The translations under genes were made by a program, and so were the position numbers. This document shows, piece after piece, positions 48,501 through 54,500 of a stretch of 64,000 nt of DNA. How positions within the stretch are numbered: the stretch's first letter is position 1; every line of letters begins with the position of its first letter. The stretch lies in NCBI GenBank assembly GCA_002269645.1, contig NIVC01002271.1, positions 62,001 to 126,000 on the forward strand. The letters run 5' to 3'. The stretch comes from Macrostomum lignano (lineage: Eukaryota). The notes under the pieces were generated by a model. It worked only from the letters and a program-made list of their open reading frames with translations, did not search any database and had not been told where the DNA came from.

Positions 48501-51500
48501 AGATAGATAGATAGATAGATAGATAAATAGATAGATAGATAGATAGATAGATAGATAGATAGATAGGTAGATAGATAGATAGACAGATAGGTAGATGGAT
48601 AGATGGATAGATAGATAGATAGATAGATAGATAGATAGATAGATAGATAGATAGATAGATAGATAGATAGATAGATAGATAGATAGACAGATAGGTAGAT
48701 GGATAGATGGATAGATGGATAGATGGATAGATAGATAGATAGATAGATAGATGGATAGACAGATAGATAGATAGATAGACAGACAGATAGATAGATAGAT
48801 AGATAGATAGATAGATAGATAGATAGATAGATAGATAGATAAATGATAGATAGATAGATAGATAAATAGATAGATAGATAGATAGATAGATAGATAAATA
48901 GATAGATAGATAGATAGATAGATAGATAGATAGATAGATAGATAGATAAATAGATAGATAGATAGATAGATAGATAGATAGATAAATGATAGATAGATAG
49001 ATAGATAGATAGATAAATAGATAGATAGATAGATAGATAGATAGATAGATAGATAGATAGATAGATAGATAGATAGATAAATGATAGATAGATAGATAGA
49101 TAGATAGATAGATAGATAGATAGATAGAGGTGGGTAGATTGGTAGCTAGGTAGGTAGCTGGATAGGTTGATTGATTGAGTGATTGATTGATAGACACAGA
49201 TACATAAGCAAAGTTTCAAGACCTTTTAACTGCTCTATACATATATATTGTTTTTCTAAGCAAGCGTTTGTTTCTAATGATCATAAAAAGTAGATTCATT
49301 TATTTAATAAAGCATTACATCGGTACTACTACACTGTTACCGTGTAGAATATGTCAGCTTTTGTATCATAGAGCTCAGTGCCCAGCCAATGCCATAACCG
49401 TACCAATGCACTATACATGAACAGGCTTTGCCGAATGCATTGGGGCCGTACAGTGCGCCTTCAGCGCCACCCTGGCATCTGTGCACCTGCACCAAAACCT
49501 GCTCAATTCGTTGCTAAGCTGGCCAGCTTTGCGTTTCTCTGCCAGCATTTTGAGCGGCCCAATCATAACCAGATTCAGTGCAGATCTAGACGAAGTAGAT
49601 CTTGTACTGCCATTCACTTTGAGATCTCTGGCCAACAGCCTGATTCAGTTGGTTGGCATTGGCATTGTCATTGCCACTTTATTCTACCTGCCAGCTCTAG
49701 CTGTTTGTCTTTCAGTAGCTGTGTTCTATTATTTCATACAAGTGAGTATTTATTTATGCCAAGGTCCTGCACGCGTGATCAGAGAGTGCCAAACTAGTAG
49801 CCAGATTATATTATATAACCTAAAATCAATTGCAATTTTAATAATGACTTTGCGCTAATCAACAAAGTTAACGGGGTGTCTTGTTCTCTACATGTATTTG
49901 TCGTTTGTATGTACTTTGTGTGTGTATTTTCTAGGCAAAAGTTTGTTGACTCTGTCTACTTACGAGTATATAAGTTATTTGAAAGTATGTAATTTAAAAA
50001 AATGCAAGATGCAATATTTTCTCATCTGCTTTAGCTACCCTAATTTTCGATGATAATGTAAAATTTCGCATGTAAATGTTTGGTTTAGAACGCGTGTACT
50101 TTGCTACGGGTATGCTTTGGTACGTGTGTACTTTGGTATATCTGTTGTTTAGTTCTAAACCAACGTATAGTACATGTACTTTAGTACATGCACCTTAATT
50201 TGTATGTACTTAGGTACGTATGTGCTTCAATTCGTATGTATTTTAGTACGCATGTACTTTAGTACGTATGTACTTAATTACGCGTGTACTTTAGTACGTA
50301 TGTACTTTAGTACGTATGTACTTTAGTACGTATGTACTTTAGTACGTATGTACTTTAGTACGTATGTACTTTAGTACGTATGTACTTTAGTACGTATGTA
50401 CTTTAGTACGTATGTACTTTCGTACCCATGTACTTAAGTGTGTTTGTATATTTAGGTAGGTAATAACTGTTACGAGTATTGATAGATGTCCCTGTGAGGT
50501 TCAAAAACCCTAAACTAGCCTACTTGTAAGTAGAATAATCGGAGCATAAAAAAATATGCTGTTGCAGCCAGTCACGCAGCCGTCGGTATGCTTGGCATTT
50601 GGCTGTGCGCCACACACGCATCTCGTCAACTGCACTCTGATCTGTTGCGCTCGCTGTTACGCCAGCCTGTTCACGCGCACGAATTACGCGCCTGCGGCAG
50701 GACTATTAACGTATTCTCTGGCGACGTGTCTCGCCTAGACATTGCCATGCCGCGTCGATGGAAATGGGTTGTACAGAGCTGCTTCTGGGTTGCGGAAAAT
50801 TTTGTCGGTTTAACGACCGTGTCGGCGTTGAGATTGTCGCCGGCTCTGCTGCCGATCGGTCTTGCCTTGTGCGCACCTTTCTGCCTTGTACAGGTGGCTG
50901 GGGTAGAGCGCATAACAATTGCATAGCAGCATCCCATGGATTGTAGTTGCTATATTGAAGCTGCGCAACAGCAGTGCTAATTGATTTTGATTCTGATTTT
51001 CTAGCTAAAGCGCTGAAAAGGGGTATTTTTTCCAGTAGTAAAACGCAAAACGCATTTTTTCATAGTTGGTTGGTTAATAAGCGTTTAATTTAAATTAATT
51101 TTATTGGAATGCAACTTGAGTTAACTAGTCGTCTAATAAAAAAATTGTGCAGAGTAATCTCAGACCTACAAATATAGCTGTTCTTCAGGTTTGATCTCTA
51201 TCCTTCAGGTTGGACCTCTATACTCCAGATTTCATCTCTATCCTTCAGGTCGGATCTGTAGCCGTTTTTAGGTTTCACTTTTATCCTTCAGTTTTATAAA
51301 ATAAAAAAATGGAAATTAATTTGTGAAAAATAATAACATCACGCAGCTGTTTGGTTAGCAATGTTTTTCGCCTATTCTAAATTCGATTCCAAGCAATTGC
51401 TAAATTAACGAATACGCTCGTAAATTCGAAGTGATTACAAAAGCGCAATACACGCCAATGCAAACCACCCGCCCAAACAAAACGCAGCGCTAGCGATCTT

Positions 51501-54500
51501 CTGGGGCGCATTTATTTCTTCGATCGCCTGTCTGAGAGCGTCCCGCCTATTGCACAACAACCTGTTGAACCGGGTGTTGGCCTGCATGCTAACATTCTTC
51601 GAATCGACCCCGCTGGGCCGCATCGTGAATCGATTTAGCAGCGACGTGAATTGCGTCGATCGCGATTTGGCCGAGAAGTGGCGCACCATGCTTCGTATTG
51701 CCTTCTGGCTATTGGAGGCTCTTATTGCCGTGTCCTTCGCGTTGCCATGGTTTCTAGTGGCTCTAATTGGCATTGCCGCAATGTTCCATGGCGTTCAGGT
51801 CTTTATTTATACTTTTAGTTGGTTTTGCGTGGTGTCGTGTTTTTGTCTCTTAACTCTTGTTGTGCACTGGTAATTATGGAAGACAAAACGCAAATGCATG
51901 CGGGGTACACGCGCACCCCGTTGCTTTCACCAGCTAATTCATATTAAAAATCAATAATTTTGCTTAACCTTGCAATATAAACAATATAACCTCTTATGTT
52001 GCTTGCCTTCGTTATTGATTGTTGTGGCTTTTAGTGTTTTTAATTTTGTGTATAGTAATGCACTTTTTGTTTTGCTTGGTACACAGATTTTATATTACGA
52101 GCGTATTGTTATATACTTTGCCAATGCGTAACCTTTACTCTTCAGTTAGCTTATTTTATGTACTTTAGTACGCATGTACTTTAGTACGCATGTACTTTAG
52201 TACGCATGTACTTTAGTACGCATGTACTTTAGTACGCATGTACTTTAGTACGCATGTACTTTAGTACGCATTTACTTTAGTACGCATGTACTTTAGTACG
52301 CATGTACTTTAGTACGCATGTACTTTAGTACGCATGTACTTTAGTACGCATGTACTTTAGTACGCATGTACTTTAGTACGCATGTACTTTAGTACGCATT
52401 TCGTTATTTTCTGAAGTATTTCTCTGGCCTACCTTTCTTCCGCTCCCATCCGACTATCCAGCCATAGCCGTTCTCATGTCGCAGTTTCTAACAGCCGTCG
52501 GCGGCACCCGCGCCTCTGTTGCCCTTTACTGGGGCCTGCTGGCCAACCTACTAAAATCGCCTGTTGTCGCTCTTGTATCTCCAGACGATGGCAAAGGCGG
52601 CGGACGAACTGTTGGCAGCGAATTCTTGCAGCGCTTTGCCGACGATCTGGCCTCGGTTGATGCCGAGATGGCGTTGGCCTGCCGATATCTGATTCAGGCC
52701 GCCTGCGGACTGCTGGAACGGGCCGCGGTGCTGTGCCAGCTGGATGTCAGCCTGTTGCTGGCTCTGCTGGCGGGCATTGCTGCCCTGCTGTTTGTACAGG
52801 TGGCCGTGTACCCGCACAGCGTTTTTAGTCCTCCGTAGATTTAATTATCTTGTCTTGTCTGGACAATTTTATTTATTTTACTATGATGATTAACCACTAA
52901 TTGTTGGATTTTCAGCTACTTTTCTGGTACGTTTCAACTTCAACTGTTTTTTGCGCACTGCATCTGCAATCAATCTAGCCTTGATTTTATACCAAGTTTT
53001 TGTGCTAGTATATATTTTGTTTCTGCTAGAACTCACTTCCCCAGTGTTCTTAATTCCCCGCTGGCTCACTTCCCCAGAATTCTGAATTGCCCGCTGGCTC
53101 ACTTCCCCAGAATTCTGAATTCCCCGCTGACTCACTTCCCCAGTGTTCTGAATTCCCCGCTGGCTCACTTCCCCAGTGTTCTGAATTCCCCGCTGACTCA
53201 CTTCCCCAGAATTCTGAATTCCCCGCTGACTCACTTCCCCAGTGTTCTGAATTCCCCGCTGGCTCACTTCCCTAGTGTTCTGAATTCCCCGCTGACTCAC
53301 TTCCCCAGAATTCTGAATTCCCCGCTGGCTCACTTCCCCAGAATTCTGAATTCCCCGCTGACTCACTTCCCCAGAATTCTGAATTCCCCGCTGACTCACT
53401 TCCCCAGAATTCTGAATTCCCCGCTGGCTCACTTCCCCAGTGTTCTGAATTCCCCGCTGGCTCACTTCCCCAGAATTCTGAATTCCCCGCTGGCTCACTT
53501 CCCCAGTGTTCTGAATTCCCTGCTGAATTCCTTAGTCTGAACTCTGTACCAGCTCACCAATTTTTCAGCTCCGCTATCTTGTGTTAATTCCCCCGTCTCA
53601 ATTCCCTACACTTTGTGTTTTAACTAATAATAGATCGGATGATGCTCTTTTGTTGCTAGGCCATGTTCCCATAGCAACTAACTGAAGCTTGCATGTAGTT
53701 GGTTAGACCACAGCATTGATAAACAGCATCTGCTTCATCTGTCGCTCCCCAATCGCAGAGAATCTTCATCAGCTCATCCCGGCAGCTGAAGCGGCTGGAA
53801 TCAACGGCCAAGTCGCCGATTTTCTCCCACTTCTCCGAGACCCTGTCTGGCGTGACCACTATTCGGGCATTCGAACAGCAATCGAATTTCAAACGAATCT
53901 GCAACGATCGCGTTAACTTTTTCAATCGCTGCTATTATCCGAATATTAGTTCGAATAGGTGGCTGGCCGTCCGGTTGGAGCTGGTTGGCAATCTGATTGT
54001 CACATTCACCTGTCTGTTTGGCGTGCTGGCCAGGGGCACCGTGTCCCCTGGTCTGGTAGGTCTGGCCGCTATCTATGCGCTCAACGTTACCCAGAGCCTG
54101 AATTGGCTGATCCGAATGACTTCGGAGTTGGAGACTAATATTGTTGCCGTGGAGAGGTGAGAATTCATTTTTATCTTATCCCATTTCAGGGATCTTAAGC
54201 TCCCTTAATCCCTATGTGCTTAGGATCCTCATGCTTAGAATTCCCAAGCTTATAATCCCCATCTTAAGATTTCATGCTTAGAATCCACATCTTTAGATCT
54301 ATGCTTAGAATCCCCATGATTATAATCCCCAACTTTAGATCCCATGCTTAGAATACCTATCTTTCGATCCCTTGCTTAGAATCGTCATGCTTATAACCCT
54401 TATCTTTAGATCCCCATGTTTATAATCCCCAGCTTTAGATCCCCATGTTTATAATCCCCATCTTTATATCCCCATGATTATAATCCCCAGCTTTAGATCC

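What the first reader, a model, noticed from the sequence alone, without database searches (positions are those of the whole stretch)
49425..52799. Four tandem mutually exclusive exons diversify TMD2 of an MRP1-like drug exporter
Seen: four stop-free paralogous segments lie between constitutive exons 48051-48407 (ends in phase 1) and 53759-54156 (starts in phase 0). Each has a phase-1 AG acceptor, a phase-0 GT donor right after a Gln codon, a length of 2 mod 3 (317, 326, 311, 338 nt) and the pattern AS..L(H/Y)..LL..(L/V)L ... (R/V)F(S/A).D....D ... Q. Including any one restores the full ORF; skipping all or joining two shifts the frame. Known: this segment matches the MRP1 end of TM13, the cytoplasmic coupling loop, TM14 and TM15; Drosophila MRP also uses mutually exclusive internal exons. 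Inferred: one gene encodes four exporters with different substrate pockets. The copies are very divergent yet intact, which suggests old duplication maintained by selection, possibly convergent with insects.
Basis: partly seen in the sequence, partly recalled or inferred. Interest (0 to 1): 0.92.

Follow-up and report, generated by a model that had tools for sequence, protein, structure and literature searches.

The report
Four alternative exons in flatworm MRP
An MRP/ABCC-type drug-exporter gene of the flatworm Macrostomum lignano carries four tandem, interchangeable versions of one exon, an arrangement that looks real here but is already known from MRP genes of insects, nematodes and other invertebrates.

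Summary
Four stop-free, mutually homologous segments (317, 326, 311 and 338 nt) lie between exons 48051-48407 and 53759-54156. Each has an AG acceptor, a Gln|GT donor and a length of 2 mod 3. Only single inclusion keeps the reading frame; the other 11 combinations give premature stops.

The window is Macrostomum lignano. The gene is a complete long MRP (about 36.6-55.9 kb, + strand).

A profile of foreign MRPs finds exactly these four copies and no others: C 99 bits, A 46, B 46, D 15.
- C is the canonical exon. The same 311-nt, phase 1-0 unit occurs in a sea slug, an oyster and three unidentified animal contigs, and those three contigs hold tandem arrays of it.
- A belongs to a distinct "A-type" version, also found in those arrays and in the oyster.
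- B and D have no counterparts elsewhere and have lost most of the conserved cytoplasmic-loop motif.

No RNA evidence was obtainable, so usage is inferred. Public gene models wrongly chain C and D. No docking/selector RNA pairing was detected.

MRP mutually exclusive exon clusters in this same protein region are already published (Drosophila, C. elegans, "helminths, annelids, mollusks"). This is therefore a new member of a known kind, and "different substrate pockets" is untested.

The parts
36658..55907 (+). Approximate span of the MRP/ABCC1-3-like gene. Candidate TMD0 exons lie at about 36.6-39.1 kb. L0 is within 39719-40375, TMD1 within 42663-43450 and 44114-44482, and NBD1 within 46049-46525 and 46977-47612. 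TMD2 and NBD2 follow, as listed in the entries below.
   Evidence: tblastn with foreign MRPs. Open-frame segments. The concatenated N-terminal half matches MRP1 at E = 6e-200, with L0, TMD1 and NBD1 in order. TMD0 was not matched by HMMER, so the 5' limit is approximate.
48051..48407 (+). Constitutive exon encoding the linker, TM12, the extracellular loop and the start of TM13. It ends in phase 1, with donor CAAG|gtgagc.
49425..49741 (+). Variable exon A, 317 nt, phase 1-0, acceptor aacag|G, donor ACAA|gtgagt. It is the 'A-type' version of the exon.
   Evidence: Family profile 46.5 bits. Alone it hits MRP1 1038-1130 and ABCC9 at E = 5e-8. A-type profile 66.0 bits against canonical 48.2. It is 36-43% identical to A-type exons of other animals but 24-28% to B, C and D.
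50568..50893 (+). Variable exon B, 326 nt, phase 1-0, acceptor ttgcag|C, donor ACAG|gtggct. It is a divergent copy with no counterpart elsewhere.
   Evidence: Family profile 45.6 bits. Alone it hits ABCC2 1041-1112 at E = 2e-7. It keeps 13 of 27 strongly conserved family columns.
51488..51798 (+). Variable exon C, 311 nt, phase 1-0, acceptor acgcag|C, donor TCAG|gtcttt. It is the canonical version.
   Evidence: Family profile 98.8 bits. It has the same 311-nt length and boundaries as the exon in Elysia, an oyster and three arrays in unidentified animals. The C form matches ABCC2 at E = 1.4e-74.
52462..52799 (+). Variable exon D, 338 nt, phase 1-0, acceptor atccag|C, donor ACAG|gtggcc. It is the most divergent copy, with a 9-residue insertion in the cytoplasmic loop.
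   Evidence: Family profile 14.8 bits, E = 0.0018. Alone it is not significant against PDB, though the weak ABCC2 match is at the right place (E = 0.4). Similarity to C has z = 13.7. It keeps 11 of 27 conserved columns. It is included in both public gene models.
53759..54156 (+). Constitutive exon encoding [15 protein letters not shown]... through TM16-17. It starts in phase 0.
55094..55907 (+). Last exon, encoding NBD2 and the C-terminus. The TGA stop is at 55905-55907.
48408..53758 (+). The five introns of the cluster, of 1017, 826, 594, 663 and 959 nt. All are GT-AG, AT-rich and full of satellites.
   Evidence: No docking/selector pairing above the shuffle control.

Best explanation
This is a cluster of tandemly duplicated, mutually exclusive exons in a complete MRP (ABCC1-3-like) gene of Macrostomum lignano. 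The pre-mRNA carries four versions of the ancestral 311-nt, phase 1-0 exon. That exon encodes most of TM13, the cytoplasmic loop between TM13 and TM14, TM14 and TM15. One version is spliced between exons 48051-48407 and 53759-54156. Every other outcome shifts the frame, creates early stop codons and would be removed by nonsense-mediated decay or give a truncated protein. The products would be transporters identical except for about 105 residues of TMD2. Shown: the duplication, the homology, the intact frames, the conserved phases and splice sites, and the frame arithmetic. Also shown: C is the canonical exon, A is a member of a conserved 'A-type' version, and tandem arrays of this same exon exist in other animals. 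Inferred: that at least A and C, and probably B and D, are actually used; that choice is regulated; and that the isoforms differ in substrate range and/or NBD coupling. Likely history: an old A-type/canonical pair, followed by duplication of the canonical copy into B and D in the flatworm lineage and fast divergence of those two.
For: Anatomy and frame test. Exactly four profile hits in the window and no decayed extras. Pairwise z of 7-14. A and B alone find MRP1/ABCC2 at the correct residues. Exon-like GC content against AT-rich introns, and a stop-free probability of 0.017-0.05 per exon (product for A, B and D about 3e-5). A, B and D keep 15, 13 and 11 of 27 strongly conserved family columns, against 18 for C. 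The gene is otherwise intact. Comparative evidence: 311-nt, 2-mod-3 units with AG/Q|GT boundaries occur singly in Elysia and an oyster, and as arrays of 3, 2 and 3 in contigs L007, L009 and L011. Exon A fits an A-type profile built without M. lignano by +17.8 bits. It groups with A-type exons in a neighbour-joining tree at 59% bootstrap. In an oyster gene model an A-type exon is joined to the constant exon [15 protein letters not shown]. Published precedent: four experimentally confirmed exclusive exons in C. elegans mrp-1, eight in Drosophila MRP, and independent origins in 'helminths, annelids, and mollusks'.
Against: No transcript evidence of any kind was found. The protein collections hold no M. 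lignano transcript-derived product even for the constitutive exons, so the absence of A- or B-containing proteins is uninformative rather than negative. B and D score far below C on the family profile and have lost most of the FFDTTPxGRIxNRFSKD loop motif. They have no counterpart elsewhere. D is barely recognisable on its own. In the butterfly both copies score about 85 bits, so the asymmetry here is unusual. No competing RNA pairing was detected. The neighbour-joining supports are weak, at 39-59%.
Confidence: 0.65

Rival explanations
1. Only the canonical exon C (perhaps also A) is used. B and D are relics of exon duplication that are skipped by the spliceosome and have not yet acquired a stop codon.
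For: Family-profile scores of 45.6 (B) and 14.8 (D) against 98.8 for C. The conserved cytoplasmic-loop motif is lost, and D has a 9-residue insertion there. No relatives of B or D were found in 1.84 billion representative proteins or in JGI metagenomes. Hydrophobicity of TM14 is weaker in B and D.
Against: At 24-32% identity to each other and to C, neutral decay would be expected to have destroyed frame and splice sites. Instead all three divergent copies are stop-free in the right frame only (B and D have 1-4 stops in each other frame). They keep AG and Q|GT at the homologous positions, keep length 2 mod 3 despite indels of +6, +15 and +27 nt, keep exon-like GC with GC2 below GC1 and GC3, and retain about half of the family-invariant residues.
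Confidence: 0.27
2. The public gene models are right: C and D are consecutive constitutive exons of one longer protein, as in UniProt A0A1I8FHP8 and A0A1I8HTH2.
For: Both M. lignano models, P0001 and P0121, contain C followed by D.
Against: C plus D as they stand shifts the frame, with the first stop right after C. The two models repair this in two different ad hoc ways. P0001 uses a cryptic acceptor inside D and a donor 21 nt beyond D. P0121 uses an internal frameshift and a cryptic donor inside C. Either product would repeat TM13-15 and break the six-helix TMD2 that aligns collinearly with solved MRP1 and ABCC2 structures. The same error occurs in a cockroach model that chains three variable copies.
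Confidence: 0.03
3. The segments are an assembly artefact or a chance resemblance.
For: The region is extremely repeat-rich.
Against: The copies differ at about 70% of residues, so they cannot be collapsed or duplicated reads. Homology statistics are far beyond chance. The same C and D sequences appear in two independent public models.
Confidence: 0.01

Closest known systems
Tandem arrays of the same 311-nt exon in other invertebrate MRP genes, seen here in contigs L007, L009 and L011 and reported by Yue et al. 2017, RNA Biol 14:1399 (not readable here)
   Same: The exon unit is identical: 311 nt, phase 1-0, and AG...Q|GT boundaries corresponding to profile positions 11-115. Arrays hold 2-3 copies (2-3 seen within the fetched ranges), made up of canonical copies plus one A-type copy (L009: a divergent copy plus an A-type copy), and L011 shows the constant exon directly downstream. 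Exon A belongs to their A-type.
   Different: Those organisms are unidentified; the constant exons of L011 are 74% identical to the mollusc Elysia but only about 60% to M. lignano. Their copies all score 72-133 bits on their best-fitting profile (71-133 across both), whereas B and D here score 46 and 16-22 at best. The position of the A-type copy in the array differs: first here and in L007, last in L011. Whether Yue et al. analysed M. lignano itself could not be checked. My recollection that their abstract lists Platyhelminthes is from memory; one search confirms only 'helminths'.
C. elegans mrp-1 exons 13A-13D
   Same: Four homologous exons in an MRP gene, shown experimentally to be mutually exclusive. 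In the nematode Oesophagostomum dentatum the four copies cover profile positions 63-114, which is the TM14-TM15 half of the flatworm exon, with the same 3' boundary.
   Different: Nematode units are about half as long (156 nt in C. elegans, 3n) and start at an extra intron after NRFGK. With a 3n length, the frame does not enforce exclusivity there. Their origin is reported as independent.
Drosophila MRP (CG6214) variable exon cluster, with 7-8 copies plus a second 2-copy cluster
   Same: It is an MRP1 orthologue with a large mutually exclusive cluster. In the butterfly Leptidea sinapis two tandem copies cover profile positions about 9-92, which is TM13, the cytoplasmic loop and the start of TM14, overlapping the flatworm exon. 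A cockroach model chains three such copies.
   Different: The 3' boundary differs: about position 88 instead of 114. Insect copies are all close to the family consensus. Choice in insects is guided by docking and selector RNA pairings with a downstream docking site, for which no sign was found here. No second cluster exists in this gene; TM6-TM9 of TMD1 lie in one open frame with no duplicated copy.
Solved MRP1 and ABCC2 structures (e.g. 8vt4, 5uj9, 9c12)
   Same: The C form aligns collinearly with MRP1 944-1262 and ABCC2 955-1270 (E about 1e-71 to 1e-74). The variable exon corresponds to ABCC2 1036-1138.
   Different: Vertebrate ABCC1 and ABCC2 have a single copy of this exon. The functional roles of TM14 residues in MRP1 (such as Glu1089 and Asp1084) are recalled from the literature, not tested here.

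Membership tests
Long MRP / ABCC1-3-like ABC exporter | TMD1-NBD1-TMD2-NBD2 core in order, with the L0 linker | tested here: met
   The N-terminal half matches MRP1 at E = 6e-200, with L0, TM6-11 and NBD1 present. TMD2 matches ABCC2 at E = 1.4e-74. NBD2 is 57-60% identical to foreign MRPs and runs to a stop codon.
Long MRP / ABCC1-3-like ABC exporter | N-terminal TMD0 (five helices) | tested here: inconclusive
   Hydrophobic open frames lie at 36.6-39.1 kb upstream of L0 but were not aligned by HMMER to MRP1. The start codon was not identified.
Mutually exclusive exon cluster made by tandem exon duplication | Adjacent homologous exons of similar length | tested here: met
Mutually exclusive exon cluster made by tandem exon duplication | Same splice phase at both ends, so that any single copy preserves the downstream frame | tested here: met
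Mutually exclusive exon cluster made by tandem exon duplication | Exactly one copy present in mature mRNAs, and each copy found in some mRNA | not testable with these tools
   No M. lignano transcript data are in any reachable collection. No paper in the library links Macrostomum with mutually exclusive exons.
Mutually exclusive exon cluster made by tandem exon duplication | A mechanism that prevents joint inclusion | tested here: met
   Frame incompatibility: all 11 other combinations give premature stops. Steric exclusion is ruled out because the introns are 594-1017 nt. U2/U12 incompatibility is ruled out because all sites are GT-AG.
Docking-site/selector (competing RNA pairing) control, as in insect Dscam, 14-3-3zeta and MRP | One intronic site complementary to a selector next to each variable exon | tested here: not met
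   The best docking position paired with all three internal introns scored 23 (upstream docking model) and 21 (downstream docking model), against shuffle means of 25.7 and 21.6. The inverted-repeat list holds only borderline pairs. This is a single-sequence test with no comparative alignment, so it has weak power.
Same cluster as insect or nematode MRP variable exons (orthology) | Identical exon boundaries and copy-to-copy orthology | tested here: not met
   Butterfly units span profile positions about 9-92, nematode units 63-114 and flatworm units 11-114. This fits independent origins, as published.
'A-type' version of the exon (working name used in this report) | Motif (E/D)(I/V/L)D(Y/L)V(I/L/M)PFT(L/V/M)RS(M/L), and a better fit to the A-type profile than to the canonical profile | tested here: met
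   Exon A reads [14 protein letters not shown]. It scores 66.0 against 48.2 bits with an A-type profile that excludes M. lignano. Most canonical controls score -31 to -46 (the divergent L009_1 copy -21), C -41, B -6 and D +5.7.

The most novel reading that the evidence does not exclude
The A-type/canonical exon pair may be a single ancient alternative-exon pair that predates the split of flatworms and molluscs. It would have been retained in M. lignano, an oyster lineage and several other invertebrates, which runs against the published picture of purely independent origins per phylum. On top of it, the flatworm lineage would have added two fast-evolving copies, B and D. Their degraded NBD-coupling loop would give isoforms with altered coupling, or with regulatory, non-transport roles, rather than merely different substrate pockets.
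Probability: 0.3. Interest if true: 0.55.

Novelty: new member of a known kind. Interest (0 to 1): 0.4.

Why it matters
If all four exons are used, one flatworm gene yields four MRP exporters that differ in TM13-TM15 and in the loop that couples TMD2 to the ATPase domains. That would be a compact way of widening detoxification or signalling-export capacity in a regeneration and ageing model organism.

It also adds a flatworm case, with an unusually asymmetric divergence pattern, to a known hot spot of exon duplication in MRP genes. It suggests that at least one variant type (A-type) is shared across distant invertebrates.

In practice, it shows that both public M. lignano gene models for this locus are wrong, because they chain C and D. 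The same mis-annotation affects other invertebrate MRP genes.

Tried and rejected
1. Transcript evidence.
- A search of 5.8 billion proteins with A+B+D found only P0001, through exon D.
- The 1.84-billion representative library added only P0121.
- Neither M. lignano model is in the gene-position index (for P0001).
- Since even the constitutive exons have no transcript-derived hit, this says nothing about usage.

2. Docking/selector RNA pairings.
- RNAduplex scanning was too slow.
- An ungapped helix scan with dinucleotide shuffles showed no signal.
- A 13-nt perfect inverted pair flanking exon C (51411-51423 and 52095-52107) is about what chance gives in 5.3 kb.

3. The two 16-nt satellite arrays as a loop-forming pair. 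Each folds on itself (-129 and -96 kcal/mol). Co-folding gains only about 7 kcal/mol, with 14 inter-array against 177 intra-array pairs.

4. Two-exon-unit duplication (A,B to C,D). There is no A~C, B~D pattern; C is the hub for all three.

5. All-against-all search of six-frame segments for other duplicated exons was swamped by satellites. The profile scan and the gene map show no second cluster.

6. Other loci. The Schistosoma margrebowiei, Zophobas and tick loci have a single copy with a split exon. The Necator protein is not on record.

7. Literature. Yue et al. 2017 could not be read by PMC id or PubMed id. The position of the Drosophila cluster was not stated in the papers that could be read.

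8. A JGI metagenome scan with exon D returned one spurious bacterial match that shares only FLQRFADD.

9. Structure prediction was not run. With a family alignment it would reproduce the family fold for any variant, so it could not separate used exons from unused ones.

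
Full report
**1. Observation**

- The upstream exon 48051-48407 ends CAAG|gtgagc in phase 1. The downstream exon 53759-54156 begins in phase 0 with [15 protein letters not shown].
- Between them lie A (49425-49741, 317 nt), B (50568-50893, 326 nt), C (51488-51798, 311 nt) and D (52462-52799, 338 nt).
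- Each is preceded by AG, ends in a Gln codon followed by GT, and has a length of 2 mod 3.
- Translating upstream exon + X + downstream exon gives an open frame for each single X. Skipping all four, or joining any two, three or all four, gives 4-15 stops, the first at or shortly after the first wrong junction.

**2. More than chance**

- All six pairs exceed every one of 300 shuffles, with z = 7-14.
- I built a profile from 109 foreign MRP segments, excluding the M. lignano model, and ran it on all six-frame segments of the window. It finds exactly four places: C 98.8, A 46.5, B 45.6 and D 14.8 bits (E = 0.0018). The next hit has E = 0.15, so there are no further decayed copies.
- A and B alone find MRP1 1038-1130 and ABCC2 1041-1112 in PDB sequences (E = 5e-8 and 2e-7). 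D alone is not significant, although its weak ABCC2 match is at the right position.
- The exons are GC-rich islands (0.49-0.61, with GC2 lowest) within introns of 0.31-0.47.
- Only 1.7-5% of dinucleotide shuffles of each exon are stop-free.

**3. Organism and gene**

- The best database match is a UniProt model from Macrostomum lignano (P0001, A0A1I8FHP8). A second model (P0121, A0A1I8HTH2) came from the representative library. The window is therefore this free-living flatworm.
- The gene runs on the + strand from about 36.6 kb to the TGA at 55905-55907. Its parts are candidate TMD0 frames, L0 (39.7-40.4 kb), TMD1 (42.7-43.4 and 44.1-44.5 kb), NBD1 (46.0-47.3 kb), the exon cluster, and NBD2 in one last exon, 55094-55907.
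- The N-terminal half matches MRP1 at E = 6e-200 and the C form of TMD2 matches ABCC2 at E = 1.4e-74. It is an intact long MRP.
- There is no second duplicated-exon cluster.
- Both public models chain C and D into one protein, each with a different makeshift repair of the frame. Neither contains A or B. Such a product would repeat TM13-15 and is not credible.

**4. What the exon encodes**

By alignment to ABCC2 1036-1138 and MRP1 about 1027-1130, the exon encodes most of TM13, its cytoplasmic extension, the loop with the motif FFDTTPxGRIxNRFSKDxDxxD, TM14, the short outer turn and TM15. The helix assignment rests on MRP1 topology recalled from memory.

Of 27 columns that are at least 70% conserved in the family, C keeps 18, A 15, B 13 and D 11. 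The loop motif is largely lost in A, B and D, and D has a 9-residue insertion there. The variation therefore touches the NBD-coupling loop as well as membrane helices.

**5. Comparison with other animals, using fetched DNA**

I used a wider profile in which the flatworm exon corresponds to positions 11-114.
- The nematode Oesophagostomum dentatum has four tandem copies of positions 63-114. This is the counterpart of C. elegans mrp-1 exons 13A-D, which are experimentally confirmed as mutually exclusive.
- The butterfly Leptidea sinapis has two tandem copies of positions about 9-92.
- The sea slug Elysia has one exon with the flatworm boundaries.
- A tick and Schistosoma margrebowiei have one copy split by an extra intron.

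Three lineages thus duplicated overlapping but differently bounded pieces of the same region. This agrees with the published view of independent origins.

**6. A conserved "A-type" exon**

- The full HMMER search with A+B+D returned 38 of the 156 short open frames scored, from ENA and Logan contigs, that match A better than C. They share the motif (E/D)(I/V/L)D(Y/L)V(I/L/M)PFT(L/V/M)RS(M/L); exon A reads [14 protein letters not shown].
- Three of their contigs hold tandem arrays of the same exon. L007 has an A-type copy plus two canonical copies. L009 has a divergent copy plus an A-type copy. L011 has two canonical copies plus an A-type copy, followed by the constant exons.
- In every unit of these arrays, and in Elysia and an oyster, a 311-nt exon with a good acceptor and a Q|GT donor can be drawn. 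This is the length of exon C.
- A profile search with the A-type alignment found one named protein, an MRP1-like model of the oyster Saccostrea cucullata, in which the A-type exon is joined to the constant exon.
- With an A-type profile that excludes M. lignano, exon A scores 66.0 bits against 48.2 on the canonical profile. C scores -41 like most canonical controls, B -6 and D +5.7.
- A neighbour-joining tree puts A with the A-type group (59% bootstrap) and B, C and D together (39%).
- B, C and D share a Glu in TM14 that no other aligned sequence has, and B and C share a Trp (alignment).

The most economical history is an old A-type/canonical pair, with later duplication of the canonical copy into B and D in the flatworm lineage and rapid divergence of those two.

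**7. Mechanism**

- Shown: frame arithmetic makes any product other than a single inclusion nonsense.
- Excluded: steric hindrance, because the introns are 594-1017 nt, and incompatible spliceosomes, because all sites are GT-AG.
- Not found: a docking site complementary to selectors in the internal introns. The observed scores were 23 and 21, against shuffle means of 25.7 and 21.6.
- The only notable intronic elements are satellites. A 16-nt unit, ATGTACTTTAGTACG(T/C), occurs only upstream of B and upstream of D in the whole window. Each array folds on itself and gains little from pairing with the other.
- How an exon is chosen is therefore unknown.
- Splice sites: A has the strongest donor (gtgagt), C the weakest (gtcttt), and D the most pyrimidine-rich acceptor.

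**8. What is missing**

There is no RNA evidence. The protein collections contain no transcript-derived M. lignano product even for the constitutive exons, so the lack of A- or B-containing proteins is uninformative.

The main rival is that B and D, or at least D, are unused relics. Their low profile scores, lost loop motif and lack of relatives speak for it. Against it, at about 70% residue divergence they still have the right frame open, homologous splice sites, lengths of 2 mod 3 despite three different indels, exon-like composition and about half of the invariant residues.

My estimates are 0.65 for a genuine cluster with at least A and C used and probably all four, and 0.27 for B and/or D being relics. 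The chained-exon models and an artefact are negligible.

**9. Novelty and score**

- Mutually exclusive exon clusters in MRP genes are established in Drosophila and C. elegans. They are reported to have arisen repeatedly in several phyla, including "helminths". I recall Platyhelminthes being named in the abstract of Yue et al. 2017, but I could not read the paper.
- No paper in the searchable library links Macrostomum with such exons, and the public annotation misses them.
- This is a new member of a known kind. Two modestly new points are the strong asymmetry of divergence among the copies and an A-type version shared with molluscs and other invertebrates, which hints that part of the array is older than a single phylum.
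- Interest: 0.4.

Noticed in passing
window 50174-50439 and 52158-52399: A 16-nt satellite, ATGTACTTTAGTACG(T/C), with about 17 and 15 copies, occurs only in these two introns of the 64-kb window (26 matches against 0.04 expected). One array lies 129 nt upstream of exon B and the other 62 nt upstream of exon D. The second array is 99% homogeneous. Each folds into strong local hairpins (-129 and -96 kcal/mol).
   Followed up: partly
window 48444-49128; 47631-47982; 53032-53525; 54217-55020: The introns of the MRP gene are packed with other arrays: 685 nt of (TAGA)n, a 33-nt G-rich minisatellite, a 33-nt minisatellite of 15 copies, and a 29/72/130-nt array. Much of the rest of the window is similar (TDRQ-type and other repeats at 40-46 kb and 58-62 kb).
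   Followed up: no
window 25711-28026 (+) and 10850-12262 (+): Open frames upstream of the MRP gene match the Major Facilitator Superfamily (PF07690; E = 2.6e-20, 2.4e-13 and 5e-7). These are one or two further transporter genes. A 534-residue open frame at 17467-19068 has no Pfam match.
   Followed up: partly
UniProt A0A1I8FHP8 (P0001) and A0A1I8HTH2 (P0121), mapping to window 51488-52820: Both public M. lignano gene models chain exons C and D, using cryptic splice sites or a frameshift. They also differ from the window by a few substitutions and local frame changes, so at least two near-identical copies or assemblies of this locus exist.
   Followed up: partly
P0122 (Blattella germanica PSN31484.1): A cockroach 'hypothetical protein' of 247 aa consists of three consecutive versions of the insect-type variable MRP segment. 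This is the same annotation error, with alternative exons chained together.
   Followed up: no
L005 (Elysia chlorotica) 13729-14338: Four tandem fragments encode IEHQMCH(Y/H)YPSIVANRWVSLL, a piece of the constant exon downstream of the variable one. They look like a small intronic tandem repeat of an exon fragment.
   Followed up: no
window 51411-51423 and 52095-52107: A perfect 13-nt inverted pair (AATACGCTCGTAA / TTACGAGCGTATT) flanks exon C, 65 nt upstream of its acceptor and 297 nt downstream of its donor. About 0.2 such pairs are expected by chance in this region, so its meaning is open.
   Followed up: partly
window 48260-48380 (within the upstream exon): The extracellular loop between TM12 and TM13 carries a roughly 17-residue insertion relative to ABCC2. 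It is rich in Ser and Gly and holds two N-x-S/T sequons (NGSS, NGTT).
   Followed up: no
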